DNA of 60,794 bases, filler included, from Platydemus manokwari (taxonomy: Eukaryota), in the NCBI GenBank assembly GCA_037951405.1. It is 5 parts of 5 records of this genome, joined end to end, with 100 filler letters (N's around TTAATTAATTAA, not from the genome) between each part and the next. Parts side by side here need not be neighbours in the genome. Positions count along the whole stretch, not along the records: positions 51,075 to 60,794 come from JBBMOY011213433.1; 4 more parts are not named here. One strand, written 5' to 3'. A model generated the notes under the pieces. The model was not told where the DNA came from. It ran no database searches and saw only the letters and a list, made by a program, of their open reading frames with translations. Positions 50,975 through 60,794 of this stretch are shown here, piece by piece (positions within the stretch are counted from its first letter, which is position 1; every line of letters begins with the position of its first letter). The position numbers and the translations under genes were made by a program.

Positions 50975-53805
50975 NNNNNNNNNNNNNNNNNNNNNNNNNN
51001 NNNNNNNNNNNNNNNNNNTTAATTAATTAANNNNNNNNNNNNNNNNNNNNNNNNNNNNNNNNNNNNNNNNNNNNTTAAATTTATTCATTGAAATACAAAT
51101 TTCAACTCATTTTTGTAAAAGCCGGAATCATACTAATACACCTAATATTTTTTTCGCACCTTTCGAGATCAAACATTAAAATATTGAATTATTTATATTC
51201 CATCGGTATAATATTAACGAGCAAATTTTATCTTGAATGAATTATAGGAGAAATCTTAAGGGAATTAATTTATTTGTATCGATTTTTACCAATAAACATA
51301 GACGATTAAATTCGTCTCCCGATTCATATAAATAGGGCGGGGAAACGTCATAATTTCCGAACATTACAAACTACCGTCTGTTACACAAAAACTCCTCGTT
51401 ACGTGAAGTCGTATTTTCATTCAAAGCCATTCTGCTCGTATTCGACCTGATTCATATTTGACCAAGAAGAATTTGCACAAGCCTTTGATCAAGTACATGC
51501 CCAAAAAGCCTTGAGTTAGATTAATTCTATAAAAAACTGATCAGTAGTGTAATAGCCGTGTATATTGTCTTATTATAGAGTTTTATCTCGAACGTCTTGA
51601 AAGGTGGTTTTCCTGCAAGAGTGTGTAGTTTATTAACCGTAAATCTTCCCTTTAGTCATTGTATATTTAAACATACTAGTTGTAGTAATTTATATAATTG
51701 TTACGTAATATTTGTGTCAATAAATTTTTATAAAACACGAGTTTGTTATTGATTTAGTAGGATTTTGATAATTGAGACTAATAGTTTGAACAAAGTACTG
51801 CATAATTATAAGGAGAAAGTTTTTTTTTACAATTGATCATTGTTGCCGTTTGATATTATCATCATATAATATTAAACGCGAGGCGAAGAAAAAATTAAAT
51901 AGGTTCTATAATTCGTACCTAGGGCTTGATCAGAACCAGGAGTGACTGATTAAGACAACAGTGATCATCAACAATAATTGAAATTAGGAGACTGATAAGA
52001 TTAAAACAATAATAGCATGCCCCAAACGCAATAGGTTTTACCTCTTTATTTTTCTGATTGTTATTTTTAGTAATCTATTTATTTAGGTTTCAAAACAAGG
52101 TATCTTTCAATTTATATTTTGATTTTCCTTATTATCATTTTATGTTTAGATCAATTAATGTTCGGTGTGATTCACAGTGTAGTTATTTTTCGAAAAAAAA
52201 TTATATGAATTATTATCATTGTTTATTAATTATTTTTTATTATTATTTATTGTACGCCACAATATTCACTCAAACCAATGATAAATGCAACCATTATTAA
52301 TTAAAAAAATTGCTAAACTAGTTTGATATACAGATGCGATTGTAACGAATATAATAAATAAAGATTATTAAATGTGTTTACCATGTATCAAGAAATAGAT
52401 TATTAAATAACTTTTATACGAAATTAATTATTAAAAAGTGCAAATCAATAATTAAAATATACTAATATTAAAAAAATAAGAATTAATTGATGATTTAAGA
52501 TCAACAGCTGTCTTAAATTAATCATTAATAACAGAATAAATTTCAAAATATGAAACATAATATTTAGCGTGTAAATAAATTATTTATGAAATTAATATTT
52601 TATTATTTGCACCTGTGCTTAAGAATCAGCCATGCTTGGAAATATAGGAAAATTCAAGTCAACAATTTTTATCAATCATTAAGCATATATACGAAGATTG
52701 CTCGCAGGAAAGTATATAACAAAAGAGGAAACATGGTAGAAGAAGAATAGTAAGAATTTTTTATTATGAATATGTTGAATAGAGACAAGATCTTGTAAAA
52801 GAAAGACGATTTTGCACCTTAGAACCCCTGCTCCAGCAGTATTTGAACGTCTACACAATTATGCAAACATATATACACAAATAATAACCTAATTTAATTT
52901 TGCAGTAACAGTCTTTATTTTTTTGAGTTAAAGATTCAAAAATCTGACACAAGTTTTAACGTCTTTAACAAAGTTTATTATGAACATTTACATTGTAAAT
53001 AATTAACTGTAATGTATATATCATTATTTATACTTGTGTTAAAGGTAAAAAAAAATATTGTATCAAAAATCAATTTAACTTCCCACTCATAATCAGAGCT
53101 AATAAAGATGTTATATGTTGATCGAGACAAATCAATATATTTAGGTAAACCGATTCAATGACTAAATGTAAAAAGAATTCAAGTTTCCTTGAATATACTT
53201 AGAGAGCATAGAAATTCAACAATAATATTAGGGGTAATACCGCAAACAATTTTGGAGTAAGATTATCATACCTATCGTTTCAATATTTGATTATTAAAAT
53301 TAATTTGTACTGTTATCTTCGATTAATATGAAGTTGGCTTAATGATATCTATACACTTTTACGAACGTCATCAATTATTTTTGAGAAGTATTGGAAATTG
53401 ACTTCATTTTATGTTATTTATATATAATAAAAGTCTGATTGCTGTAATAATATCATAACTATATTGTAAAAAGTATTGTACGTTAAGGGTCGCTCATGTA
53501 ATCTCGTTTTAATCTGATATTCTTGTATTAATGGTGGTGCCTTTAGTTTAAGCATCACATCTTGATTTGAACATTATTTTAATAAGCGTAAGTCACATAA
53601 TTTATTCTCTAAAACAATATTATCCAAAATTGATTTATTTTTTGAGCTTTATTAAGATTTTATTCATATTATTGTAATTTCTATCACTAATAACTAAGTT
53701 ATCTTGATAATAATAATTAATAAAAGATGACGATTTTGTTAAAAGGGCTAAAAAGATTAACGATTGAGTGAAATCAATTCAATCAGCACGTTAGAAATCA
53801 ATTTC

Positions 53806-54558
53806 ATGGTAAGTTTTTGAATAGTTACTTTTAAAGTATTACTATCATATTTTTCCTTATTAATAAGAAATTCTTTTAAAATACTATTTTGATCAATATA
53901 ATTTTTTGGATGATATATAATGAATATTAACTACTTGAAAATTATACATATATTTTATTTTTCGTTACATGCAATTAATAAATTATTGTTTAAATAATTA
54001 GGAAAATTATGATTTTCTTTTAATATTTCACATCTAAAGCCTTTTATATTGATTTAAATTAGATCTATTTATTTAAGTAATTTATTCAACTAATTTATTT
54101 ATTTTTTACTGGTCTAATAATGGTTTCACAGTATATTCTTTCATCGAAACTTGAATTTTCAAGTAATTTTCTTATAATTTATTAATAATAAGTTTACTAC
54201 TACAAAGGTCTTTTATGGAAAATATTTTTGTGGTCGTTAATTTCGAATATTTTTGTCCATATTATTGCAGCAGGGGTTGCAATTAAAAATTTATGGATCC
54301 ATAAACATGCGAGAATCTATGCGCCGCTTTTAATTATTTTCATGAGTGTTTTAAGTATCTTTACCGCCAACTTATTTACAAGTAATAATTAATGGACTTG
54401 TTAAATGTTTCTGATCCTTTAAAACAGGCTTAGCAATTTCTAGCATATATTATACAGCAGAATTCCCTTTCAATGATTGGCACGCTTTCATCATTGGTAC
54501 CTGTCAAACACTCGGCATGTTTGTTATATCAGTGACTCAAATTACCACCACACTGTGA
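53806..54558 (+). CDS. TMEM170: Transmembrane protein 170 (ER/nuclear-envelope three-TM protein), 112-115 aa
   Basis: Exons 53806-53808 (ATG only, followed by gtaagt), 54132-54162, 54208-54381, 54428-54558; an alternative in-frame ATG is at 54120. Translation ...LLWKIFLWSLISNIFVHIIAAGVAIKNLWIHKHARIY...FTSLAISSIYYTA...AFIIGTCQTLGMFVISVTQITTTL* aligns with TMEM170A (MWYGVFLWALVSSLFFH...LRHHKYGRF...TSAAIAGVY...GTGQT...LRILATL). Not in the ORF track. Confidence 0.88.
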
Positions 54559-55944
54559 TTTTTGCAATCGTTGAAGATTATTTTCAATTTGTAATTATAC
54601 CCATAATGACATTGATTTCTTTGTCTTAAAGAATGGAAAAAGTATTTTTATTGATTTGATCGGACAAAAAATGCAGGAATTAAATTTTGATTTTCTTTTG
54701 TTATTGGAAACATGACTGGTAAAGATGATTTTTAGAAATGTTGTTCACAAACTTATTTTTTTATTTATATGTGCAAAAATTGACAGGTTTTTTTGTAAAT
54801 GATTATTATTATTATTTTTGAAATAATATTATAATAAGTGTGACACATTTTTATAAAATCTGTTCCAATGTTACCTCGTGATTCATAATGATTTCATTAC
54901 CATTGTCTCTCTCGATCTGTTTCTCTGTCTATCTATAGATGATTATATCGCACTTTACCATTTGTTATGTCGAATTTACTCTGTATAAATTGTGGAACAA
55001 TTTGTTATAACAAGTTGAAATAAAAACTTTATAAATCTGTTTTGCGATTTGGTGTGTGTGTGTGGTTGCGGAAGTGTGAGTGATTTAATGGGTGTTTTAT
55101 TGTATTTGATTTGCAGATTTGATATTTAGAATTTATTTATTATTTGTCATTTTATTGATTTATTACACAATTATATTGGCACTGCAACTAAGTGTGATAT
55201 AAAAACTAATAATATCCATTTATGTATGGTTTTTGTAATTATTGATCATTTAAGATTGTTATGCAATTGTAAAGATTACATTTTCAACGTTTTGTAAATC
55301 ATGTTTCAGTTCAGGCCTCGTCATTGCGCCTCGGATCAAAGAAAAAGAGGGCAGAAGAAAATTTTCTGGACACCAATCAACTAGCGATAAATAAAAATAA
55401 TACAAAACCATGACATACATTAAATATTGAGGTATTATTGTTGCCATGGTAGAGCTCAGAATGTCCTCCAAACTTCTACAAGAGCAGTGACAGGTGGATT
55501 GGAATTTGAGCTGTCATTCTGATTGATGATTCCAACTCAGCGAAATTTAATATAAAATTTTTGATAACAATTATATATAATCAATAAATTAATTATACAT
55601 AAAGAACATAAAAAATTTGCACAACAAAATTTTAATTTTTTATATTTTTATTGGCACCAAATTAGTATTTACTAAACAACTATTTTATTTAATTATAATT
55701 ATTAATAATAATTTGTTTGGTAATAAATATAATTTTTTCAAAAAAACATTATTTTATTTATTTTTATTTGAACATTTATAAATATCAAATTGTTATTTTA
55801 ATTAATGATAATTATCACATATTGATAACATTCAGAATATTAATAAGTAAGAATAGTATTAAGTAAAGAATTCTAATCAGAATTTTACATAAGTAAAAAA
55901 TTATCGATAAAAATTAATATATAAACGTCATAGTTTTCTAATGA

Positions 55945-56770
55945 TGTGGACATATTCCACAGGAGACCATATAAAAACTTTCCCAACAATTATATTCTGA
56001 ATTTATTAAATACATTTTCTTCCAACAGACATATTTTAGACAATTGTTTTAACCGGACTTTTAATGAGAATTTTTCAATCAATCAATTCCTGGACGTAGC
56101 CAGGAGAAATGCGATAATAGTTTCAATCGCAAGAGAGAATCTATGTTATAAGTCGTGATTTATCACGGCTAAACAATTGACCATTGTCTTAAATAGATAT
56201 TTGTTTTTATGTCCACAAGAAATAGTCAAAAATATGTTTTTGGAAGAAAATGTAATCAGCCGGGCTTGTTAGTCGACGAATTGCTTCCCTGAATGGTTGT
56301 ACAGAATTCCACAGAATCAAAAATTTTTCGCTGTGTAAAAGTATTGAATTTATATTCTTTAATTGTAATAAATATTTGGTGTCTTGACGTCTCAGATAAC
56401 TTAAATGCGTGCTTTATAAAATACTAGGGGCTAACAATGTTAAAACGAGTTTTGTTGTTCATTTAGTAGTGATCCTATAAGGATCACAAATCCATTAATA
56501 AAATAATCATTGTTATTTGTCACTTTGTGGAAGTATTTTTGAATAAATTTGAATTAAAAAGATTGATAAAATCATTAAAGTCATAGTTGAAATAATAAGA
56601 AAGGCATTAATAGGATTTAAGATAATAAAACTGTTATCTCCATATAAGTCGTGAACATCGAGGCGAAGGAAAGAACAATTAATTGAGGTCTAATTATTAC
56701 CTGAGGATCAAACGGACTGGATATACTGATCCAGCCTTATATAGTGATTATCAAAATAATCAGTGATTAT
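55945..56770 (+). repeat. LTR-like dispersed repeat related to 51230-51990
   Basis: Shares AAAAC(AC)GAGTTT(T)GTT.TT.ATTTAGTAG and CGAGGCGAAG...TACCT.AGG...AGTGAT.ATCAA.AATAAT blocks with 51730-51990; a similar GAGGCGAA...TTACCTG block is near 3090. Confidence 0.45.
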
Positions 56771-57691
56771 AAAATCAATAAACCAAAGACCCCAAATAGT
56801 AACGTAACGTCGAAATTTAATAATAATGTGAAATTTTTGTAGTTTTTAACAGTAGCAATTAGAAATAGGCCTAAATACGTAATTTAAATTAAGAAAAAAA
56901 GGGATGAGAATTTAGTCATTTTAAAAAGACTAAGAAATAGTTACACTTTAATTAAGTAAAAACTCAAGGACGGTAACCAAAACACTAATTTTGAGACGAT
57001 TAAGAATAAGCAAGACAACTAATACGAAAACAAGATTTCTTGTTTCAAAGCGATTTTCCGTGGATTGTATTATTAAATGAGTTGAATAAATGATAGTGCA
57101 AATTCCAAACAATTTATCAGTTCATTAATATTGGAGATTATCGTTAAATATTTATTAAACAATCACCAAGATTGATTGCAATAAGCTGTTTGTCTGATTC
57201 AAGATTTTCACTTTCGACGAAGAGCTACGTTGTTTGGATTAACTGACATAGGCAATTGAGTGATGAAAATTGAACGTTGTTTATAATTATATAACTGCTA
57301 AACTTGTCTTTTGGTAACTTACAATTGATTCTGTGTTCTCTATTATTTGGCATAGGAACACTTACAGTAGTATCATGCTACATGGATAAATCAATCTTTT
57401 ATATAATCTTTTAGAATAATGATATAATAATAAATTAGTATAGATATCACAAAAATAAAAAATTAATTTATATTATGGCTTTTTTTGAAAAATAATTAAA
57501 CATATCAGAACTACATTTCATAGAAATTTTTAATATTAAAATTTGTGCACACCACTTTTAACAGCGAATTAGTATTTATTTTAAATTTCACTCATTATTC
57601 GTTATTTAGTTAAAAATGAAATAAATTACTGGTTAAACATACACAATAAACGTCAGTTTATCTTATGTTGACATTAGTAAAACCATCTATT

Positions 57692-57785
57692 GGGTCAAAG
57701 GTAAACCTCAATTTATACGTTAAACCAATCAATATCGTTCTTCACCAATCAATATTTTCGTACTACTGCTTACCGTTTATATAAA
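57692..57785 (+). promoter_or_regulatory. Compact Pol II promoter of microprotein paralog A (DR1-like site, two CCAAT boxes, TATA)
   Basis: GGGTCAAAGGTAA (57692-57704), ACCAATCAATAT twice (57724 and 57744, 20 nt apart), and TATATAAA (57778-57785) 48 nt before the ATG. Confidence 0.55.
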
Positions 57786-57825
57786 CCAACATTTAGCATG
57801 AAATTTATTAATGCAGCCAGTTTAA

Positions 57826-58077
57826 ATGTTAGATAAAATTATTTTGGTATTTTTTCTCCTTAAAGGAGTTTATTCATTTACCTATGAAGATGGCCTGATA
57901 TATCCAGAAATCGTTAAATTTGACACTACCGATTTCAATGTGTTTACTCATCTATTCTCTGCTTTAGGTGTTTGTTATTCAATTCTCATAGCAATATTGA
58001 TTGGTGTAAATTTAACTTTCAAGCTGGTTGGGAAAAAACGCAAGAAAAGATCGCGAAGCATTGCCTATTACACATAA
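57826..58077 (+). CDS. Small type I membrane microprotein, paralog A (83 aa; signal peptide, short ectodomain, one TM helix, basic tail); family not recognised
   Basis: Intronless ORF MLDKIILVFFLLKGVYS-FTYEDGLIYPEIVKFDTTDFNVFTHLFSALGVCYSILIAILIGVNLTFKLVGKKRKKRSRSIAYYT. Homologous to the two downstream ORFs; TATA and CCAAT motifs upstream. Confidence 0.8.
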   Translation: MLDKIILVFFLLKGVYSFTYEDGLIYPEIVKFDTTDFNVFTHLFSALGVCYSILIAILIGVNLTFKLVGKKRKKRSRSIAYYT

Positions 58078-58342
58078 ATTTAGTAATCTTAGTTTTGTAT
58101 AAATTAATTTGCAATTAGAAATTATATTGTTATTGTTTGTGTTGTTTAATTTTTTTTCGAAATGCAATGAATTAATCGCTTTGGAAAGTAAATATCAATT
58201 TTAATGTCAACATTGGTTAAGATTGTGTGCTTGGTAAATATGATTCCAATAAATATAATCAACTCATTGAAGAGACATAATTAAATAAAAGATACTACGG
58301 CTTAAAAAATATTTTGACAACTTCTGTTCTGTCTTAACATCA

Positions 58343-58585
58343 ATGAATGCCATAATAGTTCTATTGTTGATAAATAGTCTATGTCTATTGCCATGCTGTA
58401 ATGGGATTACTTTAGATGAAGGTCTAGAAAATCCAGAAACATATATACGATTTGATGTTTCGGAAAACGTTATGGGATTGCATATATTTTATTCTTTATT
58501 AGTCTGTTATTTGATATTGATAGCCATGTGGATTTCCATTAATATCGTTCACAAAATTCGGGGACCCAGAAAACGGAGACGGTAA
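58343..58585 (+). CDS. Small type I membrane microprotein, paralog B (80 aa)
   Basis: MNAIIVLLLINSLCLLPCCNG-ITLDEGLENPETYIRFDVSENVMGLHIFYSLLVCYLILIAMWISINIVHKIRGPRKRRR; same T..PE..[FY]D-x8-H-x4-L-x2-CYxIL-x7-N pattern. Confidence 0.8.
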   Translation: MNAIIVLLLINSLCLLPCCNGITLDEGLENPETYIRFDVSENVMGLHIFYSLLVCYLILIAMWISINIVHKIRGPRKRRR

Positions 58586-59634
58586 AATTATGCAATACAT
58601 TGATATAGTATTTGCTTTGCAATTTGAATTTGGTTTAGCTTAATATTTAGCTTAGTTCACTGTATTGTAGGGTATTTTAAATTTGTTTTTCGTCAATTCT
58701 GAGACGAATTTAGACGTTAATAATTATATATTTTGATAAAGTGCTTTTTAGTCTTTATTTCAAGTCATTTTCATTATAAAAGTTCAGTATATTATTCAAC
58801 TTTGATATCGTTTATAATTTGGTCATTAGATGTATGTTAAAATTAAATTAAAATGAAAACTGTATTGTTAAATTAATTCATTTTAAATTGAAGTTGTTTT
58901 CTTAAAAGCTGTTGATTTAAATGAACATCCTGACTAATTTTAAAATGTCAGCTAAGCACTGTTTTATAAATATTGAAGTTAATTGACGGATAAGTTAAGC
59001 ATTGTTTTCTAAATTATTTTAATATAATTTGCAGTTTAATTTGTATCGACAAACAACCATATATAAACGATACCATTTTTAAAAGTTCTAAATTAAAGTA
59101 CATGTATCCAGGTAAAATGAAATTAAGTTAGTTGTTGATTCGTTCAGGTCATAAATCTAGCAGTGATTATCACATTCAACAGTAATTTTCTCACAATATT
59201 TTAACTTTAAATATTTTTGTTTTATCGAGTCTCATTTGATCATGGTTTCATAAATATCGAATGTACTTTCCAAAATAATAGAACGCGGTGGCTTGTATAC
59301 ATGTAAATCTCTGATCATTTTTTTAACAATATAATTTTATTATTTGAAATTCTTAAAAGTTAAATATTGAAATAAAATAATGATGTTATAAAAACTCAAT
59401 ACTAAAAAAACATTTATAAAAATAAATATTGTGAATCTCAAACTGGCTTAATCAATCACATATTACAATATCATATTTTATTCAAATTAAATTATTCAGA
59501 ATAAATAAATTTACCTTCCATTGTCGATTGGCGAATTCTTGATGATAAAGATAATTGATCTTGCAAATTTATTCACGAATACAAGGTGTATATATACATT
59601 AAGATCATTTGAATTCCAAAACAATTTTTTACCA

Positions 59635-59871
59635 ATGACAAAGCTTACTTGGATTTGTTTAATTTTTTTTATTCCTTTAACGCTAAGTATTACACTTCAA
59701 CAAGCTGAACAAGATCCAGAACGGTATATAAAATATGATCGAAACGTTTTCAAGATATGGTTTCATATAATCATTTCATTGGTGATTTGCTATTCGATTT
59801 TAGGATTTCTTTGGGTTATCATCAATTCTGTCGTTCGAATTCGTGAATACAAGAAAGTAACACCAAATTAA
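59635..59871 (+). CDS. Small type I membrane microprotein, paralog C (78 aa)
   Basis: Likely start is ATG 59635 (the ORF track uses an upstream TTG at 59521): MTKLTWICLIFFIPLTLS-ITLQQAEQDPERYIKYDRNVFKIWFHIIISLVICYSILGFLWVIINSVVRIREYKKVTPN. TATATATA at 59589-59596. Confidence 0.8.
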   Translation: MTKLTWICLIFFIPLTLSITLQQAEQDPERYIKYDRNVFKIWFHIIISLVICYSILGFLWVIINSVVRIREYKKVTPN

Positions 59872-60794
59872 TTGTTAAAATGATATTTTCTGAATGTTAT
59901 TTATTTACATTTGATTTATTCTTTTGATTCACATGTAATTTTGATTAGAATCGTATAATTAATCATTCTTATTGATTTTTAAAAATGTTTTTTTAATTTA
60001 ATTCAAATTTATTTGGATAGTTTATAAAATGGGAATCATAATTAAAGATTTTTAAAATTAATTTGAATTGAGAAGATCCTAAAATTCTGCAAAAAATATA
60101 AATTTTAATAATAATATTCTCTGTAAATCGGTGATTATTTATGTACATTTTCTTTTGAATTATCTAAAATTTGTGTAATACATCAAAGCTAGCTTGAATT
60201 ATAGATGAAATTAAAAATGTTATTAAAAATAAATAAAAATAATAATTCCATGGGTATCAAGTGATACACAAATAAGTGAAAGAAAATCAAAAAAGAAGAA
60301 ATGAAATATATTTAGAAGATAATAACTATAATTATTATTAATTAAGTATTTGAAAATTGAAGTTATTTATTTTAAAATAAAAAATTATTTAAAAAGAAAA
60401 ATGAATTTTATTCATCAAATGGTCGATTTCTTTTTATAAAATTCGTAACATTTAGAATATTTCAAGTCTTTTTAGTCAACTATTTGTTATATTAGTTCAT
60501 TCTTACTGTCGATTTGGAATCAACTCAATATTTCACAATAGACTCTATGTATACCTTAATATAAATTTTATGTTCGTGTTTGGGGTTGCCTTTGTTTATT
60601 TGTATTATCAGTCTCTATATTGATTTTATTGTGAATCAATGCCGACTTGATCAGTCTCTGTAAGCTCTGACCAACCCCTTAAGGTACACAAATTAAACCT
60701 TAACTTATAGTTTTTATTCTTCACCTCGCTATCTATACTATATGGAGATAGTATGATAGGCAGCAATGATCCAGTTAATATATTTATCAGTCTC

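What the first reader, a model, noticed from the sequence alone, without database searches (positions are those of the whole stretch)
57826..59871. Tandem cluster of three unrecognised signal-peptide + single-TM microproteins with an invariant PE..D..H..CYxIL..N signature
Seen: three intronless same-strand ORFs of 83, 80 and 78 aa within 2 kb. Each has a hydrophobic N-terminal signal-like segment, a ~25-aa ectodomain starting [IF]T, one TM helix and a basic cytosolic tail. The mature parts align with only one 1-aa gap: FTYEDGLIYPE-IVKFDTTDFNVFTHLFSALGVCYSILIAILIGVN / ITLDEGLENPETYIRFDVSENVMGLHIFYSLLVCYLILIAMWISIN / ITLQQAEQDPERYIKYDRNVFKIWFHIIISLVICYSILGFLWVIIN. D-to-H (+9), H-to-C (+8) and C-to-N (+12) spacings are identical, while signal peptides and flanking DNA show no obvious similarity, implying old duplications under purifying selection. 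Known analogy (architecture only, no homology claimed): small single-pass auxiliary subunits of channels and pumps (KCNE/MPS, FXYD, C. elegans BKIP-1 and EAT-18). Inference: a diversified family of membrane micro-regulators or adaptor chains, easily missed by gene predictors using a 100-aa cutoff.
Basis: partly seen in the sequence, partly recalled or inferred. Interest (0 to 1): 0.88.

Follow-up and report, generated by a model that had tools for sequence, protein, structure and literature searches.

The report
Flatworm-wide family of single-pass membrane microproteins
The three small genes are real, anciently duplicated members of an uncharacterised family of about 80-residue single-pass membrane proteins found, among named sequences, only in flatworms; their function is unknown, and an accessory subunit of a larger membrane protein is the best guess.

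Summary
Three same-strand, intronless ATG ORFs (57826-58077, 58343-58585, 59635-59871) are homologous: pairwise BLASTP E = 6e-14, 3e-7 and 1e-14. Three ORFs of this length compare with 0.19 expected in shuffles. They share no flank similarity, synonymous sites are saturated, and dN/dS is about 0.4-0.6.

A profile of the three found 34 true relatives among 1.84 billion representative proteins. Every hit that carries a name is from Platyhelminthes (Macrostomum, Schistosoma, Fasciola, Clonorchis, Echinostoma, Paragonimus, Fasciolopsis, Mesocestoides, Spirometra, Protopolystoma, Cichlidogyrus). All are "hypothetical" or carry mutually inconsistent automatic names. There is no match in Pfam, PDB sequences or Foldseek.

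The family signature is a signal-peptidase site, then [VIL]-T-L-x-E-[AG], P..[YF]-I-x-Y-D, F-N...H, a TM helix with Y..L, and G plus a basic tail.

Same-strand paralogue pairs also occur in Clonorchis and Spirometra. FXYD membership was tested and not met.

So this is a real, phylum-wide orphan family that is partly annotated elsewhere. The role as an accessory subunit is inference from architecture only.

The parts
57826..58077 (+). Gene m1, 83 aa, intronless. Signal peptide aa 1-17 (57826-57876); ectodomain aa 18-41 (57877-57948); TM helix aa 42-65 (57949-58020); basic tail aa 66-83 (58021-58074); stop 58075-58077.
   Evidence: ORF. Family HMM score 122.7 bits. Hydropathy. Alignment to 36 relatives. 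This is the most divergent copy: it has F-T-Y instead of [VIL]-T-L and a one-residue deletion before the I/V-x-F-D motif. A TATA-like string lies 40-47 nt upstream of the ATG, which is weak evidence in 25% GC DNA.
58343..58585 (+). Gene m2, 80 aa, intronless. Signal peptide aa 1-21 (58343-58405); ectodomain aa 22-46 (58406-58480); TM helix aa 47-70 (58481-58552); basic tail aa 71-80 (58553-58582); stop 58583-58585.
   Evidence: ORF. HMM score 136 bits. AlphaFold2 model with pLDDT 82 and helices at 2-19, 24-29 and 41-73. Family alignment.
59635..59871 (+). Gene m3, 78 aa from the ATG at 59635, intronless. Signal peptide aa 1-18 (59635-59688); ectodomain aa 19-43 (59689-59763); TM helix aa 44-67 (59764-59835); tail aa 68-78 (59836-59868); stop 59869-59871.
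   Evidence: The ORF is listed from the TTG at 59521. The family alignment places the start at the Met 18 residues before I-T-L. HMM score 138 bits. A TATA-like string at about 59589-59597 lies downstream of the alternative in-frame ATG at 59542.

Best explanation
The three ORFs are separate, intronless protein-coding genes. They are old tandem paralogues of an uncharacterised family that, among named sequences, is found only in flatworms. This part is shown, and I put it at about 0.95. Each product has a cleavable signal peptide. Cleavage would leave a mature chain of about 60 residues, oriented N-out and C-in. That chain has a conserved free N-terminus ([VIL]-T-L-x-E-[AG]), an ectodomain of about 24 residues with no Cys in the three window copies, and the motifs P..[YF]-I-x-Y-D and F-N...H. 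One TM helix follows, with a conserved His at its outer end, a mid-helix Tyr and an invariant Leu, then a Gly and a polybasic cytosolic tail. The most likely mode of action is inferred, not shown. I think the chain is a non-catalytic accessory or assembly subunit. Its TM helix would pack against a multi-pass membrane protein such as a pump, channel, transporter or receptor. Its short ectodomain would contact that partner's outer loops, and the paralogues would serve different partners or tissues. The confidence given below is for this mechanistic part.
For: Coding and homology: pairwise E-values of 1e-14 to 3e-7; 3 long ORFs against 0.19 expected; dN/dS of 0.39-0.58 with dS saturated at 1.4-1.7. 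Family: 34 true hits of about 80 aa among 1.84e9 representatives, with E down to 4.5e-16. All named hits are Platyhelminthes, spanning Macrostomorpha, trematodes, cestodes and monogeneans. Conservation shares, in m1 numbering: T19 92%, L20 84%, E22 81%, D/N26 89%, P27 76%, I30 86%, Y32 86%, D33 81%, H42 86%, A/S46 95%, Y51 81%, L54 100%, G69 78%. The residue before the conserved [VIL]-T is G, S or A in 31 of 37 sequences, as expected for a signal-peptidase site. Topology: two hydrophobic segments and a basic tail and the AlphaFold2 helices. Independent genes: relatives are stand-alone gene models of about 80 aa, intronless in Macrostomum, Clonorchis and Spirometra and with one intron of about 40 nt in Schistosoma and Fasciola. 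Tandem same-strand paralogue pairs also occur in Clonorchis and Spirometra. The ectodomain and the outer half of the TM helix are the most conserved parts, as expected if both contact a partner.
Against: There is no evidence for any partner, for expression or for localisation. Conservation along the TM helix does not show a significant one-sided helical periodicity (permutation p = 0.16). No sequence or fold relative with known function was found in Pfam, PDB sequences or Foldseek. Gene neighbourhood is not conserved: TMEM170 lies beside the cluster only in this window. The architecture fits several other roles equally well.
Confidence: 0.4

Rival explanations
1. The proteins are very divergent FXYD-type regulators of the flatworm Na,K-ATPase, that is, true or convergent counterparts of the vertebrate gamma-subunit family.
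For: They share the overall build: a signal peptide, a short ectodomain, one TM helix and a basic tail of about 60 mature residues. The conserved I-x-Y-D resembles the Phe-X-Tyr-Asp motif that defines FXYD proteins. One relative, P0050 from Echinostoma, carries the UniRef name 'FXYD domain-containing ion transport regulator'.
Against: No family member matches Pfam PF02038, even at permissive thresholds. The Phe position is Ile or Val in the family and never the majority Phe. The two conserved TM glycines, the conserved Ser and the following Cys named are not conserved here; Gly reaches 54% and 35% at the nearest positions. Other members carry unrelated automatic names such as 'Epithelial membrane protein 1', 'Protein S-acyltransferase' and 'Inner membrane protein', so the FXYD name looks like an unreliable automatic guess. 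The reference list of PMC7953255 cites a study titled 'Early vertebrate origin ...' of these regulators.
Confidence: 0.08
2. The protein is a membrane-tethered signal. The conserved 24-residue ectodomain with its free N-terminus would be the active part, either displayed to a receptor on a neighbouring cell or shed as a peptide.
For: The first residues after the predicted cleavage site are among the most conserved in the protein (T 92%, L 84%, E 81%). The ectodomain is as conserved as the TM helix.
Against: The TM helix carries equally conserved polar and aromatic positions (H, Y and the invariant L), which a mere anchor would not need. No processing site is conserved between the ectodomain and the TM helix. 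The dibasic run lies on the cytosolic side.
Confidence: 0.12
3. The protein is a self-assembling homo-oligomer, either a small pore or a membrane-organising bundle comparable to other single-helix oligomers, and works without a multi-pass partner.
For: It is a single helix with a conserved His at the outer end and small residues (A/G/S) in the outer half. The window subgroup adds a TM Cys and an Asn.
Against: The conserved positions show no amphipathic or periodic pattern. No similarity to any known pore-forming microprotein was found. This rival was not tested with an oligomer prediction.
Confidence: 0.1
4. The ORFs are chance open frames, or are genes of a transposon or an endogenous virus.
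For: The DNA is 25% GC with many low-complexity repeats. A 26-nt inverted repeat, 92% complementary, flanks m3.
Against: Long ORFs are rare in such AT-rich DNA: 0.19 expected, 3 seen. The family is conserved across the phylum. No transposase, polymerase, capsid or other Pfam domain occurs in any neighbouring frame. No terminal repeats bracket the cluster and the flanks share no similarity. Relatives sit as one or two copies per locus examined in other genomes.
Confidence: 0.02

Closest known systems
Uncharacterised flatworm proteins, e.g. Macrostomum lignano PAA72310.1 (BOX15_Mlig019061g1), Schistosoma mansoni A0A5K4FAM4, Clonorchis sinensis GAA55276.1 (CLF_107517), Fasciola THD18646.1, Spirometra KAL7055088.1
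   Same: They are true homologues, with profile E-values from 4.5e-16 to about 1e-4. They have the same length, the same architecture and the same conserved motifs.
   Different: Identity to the window proteins is only 17-38%. The neodermatan copies lack the TM Cys and Asn of the window subgroup. The Schistosoma and Fasciola genes have one short intron. None has a known function.
FXYD proteins (Na,K-ATPase regulators; Pfam PF02038)
   Same: They have the same build and size, and an x-Y-D motif sits in the short ectodomain a few residues before the TM helix.
   Different: There is no Pfam match. Phe is replaced by Ile or Val. The two TM glycines, the Ser and the Cys are not conserved, and the spacing from the Asp to the TM helix is longer. 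The likeness is one of working principle at most, not membership.
   Same: They share the general idea of one TM helix with short flanks that modulates a larger membrane protein. This comparison rests on my own knowledge and concerns architecture only.
   Different: No sequence relationship was found: none of the 37 sequences hits any Pfam family above its cutoff. KCNE proteins have no cleaved signal peptide, again from my own knowledge.

Membership tests
Flatworm orphan microprotein family (defined here) | Length of about 80 aa with an N-terminal hydrophobic signal segment ending in a small residue (G/S/A) directly before [VIL]-T | tested here: met
   m1 has ...Y-S|F-T, m2 has ...N-G|I-T and m3 has ...L-S|I-T. 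The residue before the cut is G, S or A in 31 of 37 family members.
Flatworm orphan microprotein family (defined here) | Ectodomain motifs T-L-x-E-[AG], [DN]-P, [YF]-I-x-[YF]-D and F-N, followed by His at the start of the TM helix | tested here: met
   m2 and m3 have nearly all of these motifs. m1 deviates, with T-Y-E-D-G and a one-residue deletion before V-K-F-D. Profile scores are 123-139 bits (by construction). Reciprocal profile hits to relatives reach E = 4.5e-16.
Flatworm orphan microprotein family (defined here) | One TM helix with conserved A/S, Y and an invariant L, then [KR]-x-x-G and a polybasic tail | tested here: met
   Y51 and L54 are present in all three copies. G69 is present in m1 and m2 and is replaced by E in m3. 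All three have basic tails.
FXYD (PF02038) | Phe-X-Tyr-Asp motif in the ectodomain (PMC7953255) | tested here: not met
   The family has I/V-x-Y/F-D, with I at 86% and V at 8% at the Phe position. Only the Y-D part is shared.
FXYD (PF02038) | Two conserved glycines in the TM helix, one conserved serine and a Cys 3 or 5 residues after it | tested here: not met
   No TM glycine is conserved above 54%. There is no conserved Ser at the inner end of the TM helix and no conserved Cys in the tail.
FXYD (PF02038) | Match to the family's profile HMM | tested here: not met
   PF02038 does not appear for the three window proteins at E up to 10. It is absent from the 25 of 34 families shown for the 37 aligned sequences at E up to 1. 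It is also absent for P0050 and seven other relatives at E up to 10.
FXYD (PF02038) | Physical association with the Na,K-ATPase alpha-beta complex | not testable with these tools
   No tool for complex prediction or for experimental data was available.
KCNE / other curated single-pass auxiliary subunit families in Pfam | Match to any curated profile | tested here: not met
   There are no Pfam hits above cutoff. Only scattered chance hits with E of about 1e-3 or weaker, all below their families' cutoffs, fall on unrelated families.

The most novel reading that the evidence does not exclude
This family is the flatworms' own class of single-pass regulatory subunits, the functional counterpart of vertebrate FXYD/KCNE-type chains. 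It would be an obligatory and so far unseen component of a flatworm pump, channel or receptor complex, conserved from free-living Macrostomum to schistosomes and tapeworms, with paralogues tuning the complex in different tissues.
Probability: 0.3. Interest if true: 0.7.

Novelty: new variant of a known kind. Interest (0 to 1): 0.45.

Why it matters
Flatworms include major human and livestock parasites as well as the planarian regeneration models, and much of their membrane physiology rests on complexes whose subunit make-up is inferred from other phyla. A chain of 60 mature residues that has kept its ectodomain and TM motifs across the whole phylum is very likely doing something specific, yet it has no name, no Pfam family and no literature. 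Defining the family makes it possible to annotate it in genomes where it is missed. Examples are the three genes here and a second copy in Spirometra. It also makes it possible to look it up in existing expression atlases and proteomes. If it proves to be a subunit of a pump or channel, it would change how those flatworm complexes are modelled. If not, it is one more lineage-specific orphan family, which is ordinary.

Tried and rejected
- The word-indexed protein search with the three-sequence alignment found nothing. With a 28-sequence alignment it found only 7 hits, all flatworm or unnamed.
- The exact-sequence look-ups of the window proteins found nothing.
- The PDB profile search gave only chance hits with E of at least 0.096. 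Foldseek of the AlphaFold2 model against the PDB gave 0 hits.
- Three long proteins among the profile hits (P0028, P0031, P0034) are repeat proteins that match a short stretch many times. I rejected them as spurious.
With m2 alone it found no relative.
- Identification of the source organism failed. The TMEM170 exon search found nothing, and no paper mentions the sample or assembly accessions of the closest hits.
- No paper mentions the accessions of named family members. Keyword searches for FXYD or single-pass proteins in flatworms gave nothing relevant. PMC5509871 is not held.
- Rfam found nothing in the piece.
- The helical-periodicity test of TM conservation was not significant, with p = 0.16.
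- No synteny with TMEM170 was found in other flatworm loci.
- The NJ tree places the window copies with Macrostomum and unnamed environmental sequences. The alignment has only 61 columns and the bootstrap values did not print, so I draw no orthology conclusions from it.
- The exons were scanned separately by reference.
Full report
**Scope**

Only the piece 51075-60794 was used. It contains no N. GC is 17-31% in 500-nt windows, about 25% overall.

**1. The observation**

- m1 at 57826-58077, 83 aa.
- m2 at 58343-58585, 80 aa.

They align with 13 invariant columns, and there are no gaps from the conserved Asp to the Asn. The stated D/H/C/N spacings are therefore correct. Pairwise BLASTP gives 37%, 35% and 38% identity with E = 6e-14, 3e-7 and 1e-14.

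In DNA this AT-rich, stop codons are frequent. Two hundred shuffles of the piece give on average 0.19 ATG ORFs of at least 78 aa, against three observed. The three are among the five longest stop-free frames of the piece. An HMM of the three, run over every frame of the piece, finds no fourth copy or remnant.

Hydropathy shows an N-terminal hydrophobic stretch, a polar stretch of about 24 residues, a second hydrophobic stretch of about 23 residues and a basic tail. An AlphaFold2 model of m2, built on a 28-sequence alignment (mean pLDDT 82), has helices at 2-19, 24-29 and 41-73.

The 300-nt flanks share only 9-16-nt chance matches, and even the coding DNA is barely alignable. Nei-Gojobori estimates give dS of 1.4-1.7 (saturated), dN of 0.65-0.82 and dN/dS of 0.39-0.58. 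The duplications are therefore old, and the frames have been kept open and similar at the protein level.

**2. What it is**

None of the three exact proteins is in a collection of about 15 billion predicted proteins, nor in the gene-position index. They are therefore unannotated in their genome. They match no Pfam family.

An exhaustive HMMER search with the three-sequence profile against 1.84 billion cluster representatives returned 37 proteins at E of 0.001 or better, the best at 4.5e-16. Three of these are long repeat proteins that match a short stretch six or seven times, and I treat them as spurious.

The other 34 are mostly 67-114 aa, with a few longer models of up to 182 aa that carry N- or C-terminal extensions, and they have the same build. 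Every one that carries a name comes from Platyhelminthes:
- Macrostomum lignano, with at least four distinct clusters.
- Seven Schistosoma species.
- Trematodes: Fasciola hepatica and F. gigantica (two paralogues), Fasciolopsis, Paragonimus, Clonorchis, and Echinostoma (two).
- Cestodes: Mesocestoides (at least two) and Spirometra.
- Monogeneans: Protopolystoma and Cichlidogyrus.

The unnamed hits sit on short contigs from environmental or run-level assemblies.

All names are 'hypothetical', 'unnamed' or automatic labels that contradict one another. Examples are 'Epithelial membrane protein 1', 'Protein S-acyltransferase', 'Inner membrane protein', 'G_PROTEIN_RECEP_F1_2 domain-containing' and 'FXYD domain-containing ion transport regulator'. 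I take these to be machine guesses, which is my own judgement.

None of the 37 aligned sequences reaches any Pfam cutoff. A profile of 28 members finds nothing credible among PDB sequences. The model finds nothing by Foldseek in the PDB. No paper in the library mentions the accessions I tried.

By inference, the window comes from a flatworm. I could not name the species.

**3. Anatomy of the family**

Shares over the 37 aligned sequences, in m1 numbering:
- The residue before the conserved block is G, S or A in 31 of 37, which fits a signal-peptidase site.
- Then [VIL], T19 92%, L20 84%, E22 81% and A/G23 100%.
- D/N26 89%, P27 76%, Y/F29 89%, I30 86%, Y32 86% and D33 81%.
- F37 76%, N38 73% and H42 86%.
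- A/S46 95%, L47 73%, Y51 81% and L54 100%.
- K/R66 73%, G69 78%, then a run of basic residues.

The signal peptides are not conserved.

The ectodomain of the three window copies has no Cys and no N-glycosylation sequon, read directly. It is net acidic in m1 and m2, and the tail is strongly basic. This fits an N-out, C-in orientation by the positive-inside rule, which is established knowledge.

Per-column conservation is highest in the ectodomain and the outer half of the TM helix. A test for one-sided helical periodicity of conservation in the TM helix was not significant (p = 0.16).

**4. Gene structure and arrangement**

The window genes are intronless. So are the Macrostomum, Clonorchis and Spirometra genes and the environmental copies, whose gene spans translate directly to the product.

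The Schistosoma and Fasciola genes are 43 and 39 nt longer than their coding length. Their two halves meet at profile position 40, which indicates one short intron.

Tandem same-strand paralogues are not unique to this window:
- In Clonorchis, P0022 and P0030 lie about 8.7 kb apart.
- In Spirometra, P0007 has an uncalled paralogue about 8.6 kb upstream.
- Schistosoma and Macrostomum show one copy within 10 kb on each side, and Fasciola one copy within the shorter stretch that could be fetched, about 10 kb upstream and 1-4 kb downstream.

Nothing suggests a mobile element or a virus. No neighbouring frame has a Pfam domain of that kind. No terminal repeats bracket the cluster, and there are no Rfam matches.

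Each ATG is preceded at 38-60 nt by a TATA-like string. In 25% GC DNA this is weak evidence.

**5. How it most likely works**

Shown: these are coding genes under long-term constraint, with the features of cleaved type I single-pass proteins of about 60 mature residues.

Inferred: the conservation of a short, Cys-free ectodomain together with polar and aromatic positions in the TM helix (His, Tyr, small residues) is what one expects of a chain that binds another membrane protein along both its outer loops and its helices. This is the accessory-subunit model, to which I give about 0.4.

The rivals are as follows:
- A tethered or shed ectodomain signal (0.12). The very conserved mature N-terminus favours it, and the conserved TM helix argues against a mere anchor.
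- A homo-oligomeric bundle or pore (0.10), which was not tested.
- True FXYD kinship (0.08).
- A chance ORF or mobile-element origin (0.02).

The remainder is left for functions not thought of.

**6. Comparison with known families**

FXYD proteins are defined by a Phe-X-Tyr-Asp motif, two conserved TM glycines, a serine and a nearby cysteine (PMC7953255). The flatworm family has I/V-x-Y-D instead. It lacks the conserved glycines, serine and cysteine and does not match PF02038. Membership is therefore not met, and only the working analogy stands.

**7. Novelty and verdict**

The family is real and phylum-wide. It has no Pfam family, and I found no paper that mentions it. It is already deposited piecemeal as hypothetical proteins, so the 'unrecognised' claim is only half right.

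It is a new variant of a known kind, the single-pass microprotein and probable accessory chain. Lineage-specific orphan families are common in flatworms, so a specialist would be interested rather than astonished. I score interest at 0.45.

Later I wrote short motif descriptions recalled for FXYD proteins and for a small viral channel protein. The TMEM170 assignment rests on the Pfam hits, and the FXYD features rest on the paper read.

Noticed in passing
window 54120-54558 (+): This is a TMEM170-family gene 3.3 kb upstream of the cluster on the same strand. Two frames match Pfam PF10190 back to back: profile 5-64 at 54192-54389 (E = 1e-8) and profile 63-106 at 54415-54555 (E = 2e-7). Reading the sequence suggests three exons, 54120-54162, 54193-54381 and 54428-54558, with GT-AG introns of only 30 and 46 nt, giving about 120 aa. 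The first intron is my reading only. The joined model was not searched.
   Followed up: partly
L010:1355-1687 (+) (Spirometra sp., CM118284.1): This is a second family member, 8.6 kb upstream of the annotated KAL7055088.1 gene and on the same strand. It has no gene call in the locus table, and its closest relatives are the Mesocestoides group. It is an example of the family being missed by annotation.
   Followed up: partly
L007:18695-19099 (+) (Clonorchis sinensis DF143989.1): This is a second same-strand paralogue, identical to P0030 over 99 residues, about 8.7 kb downstream of CLF_107517. It is not called in this assembly's locus table.
   Followed up: partly
window 59403-59428 and 59970-59995: A 26-nt inverted repeat, 92% complementary, brackets gene m3 with 541 nt between the arms. 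It is AT-rich and may be chance. No other sign of a mobile element was found.
   Followed up: no
window 55262-55513 (-) and 52058-52297 (+): Two further stop-free frames of 84 and 80 codons are as long as the microprotein ORFs, but they have no Pfam match and no similarity to the family. Whether they are exons or chance was not resolved.
   Followed up: partly
P0001 / L001:312-773; P0030; P0011; window 59521-59634: Several database models of the family carry long N-terminal extensions that precede the real signal peptide. These are upstream in-frame read-through, like the TTG/ATG extension of m3. The true start is probably the Met about 18-22 residues before [VIL]-T.
   Followed up: partly
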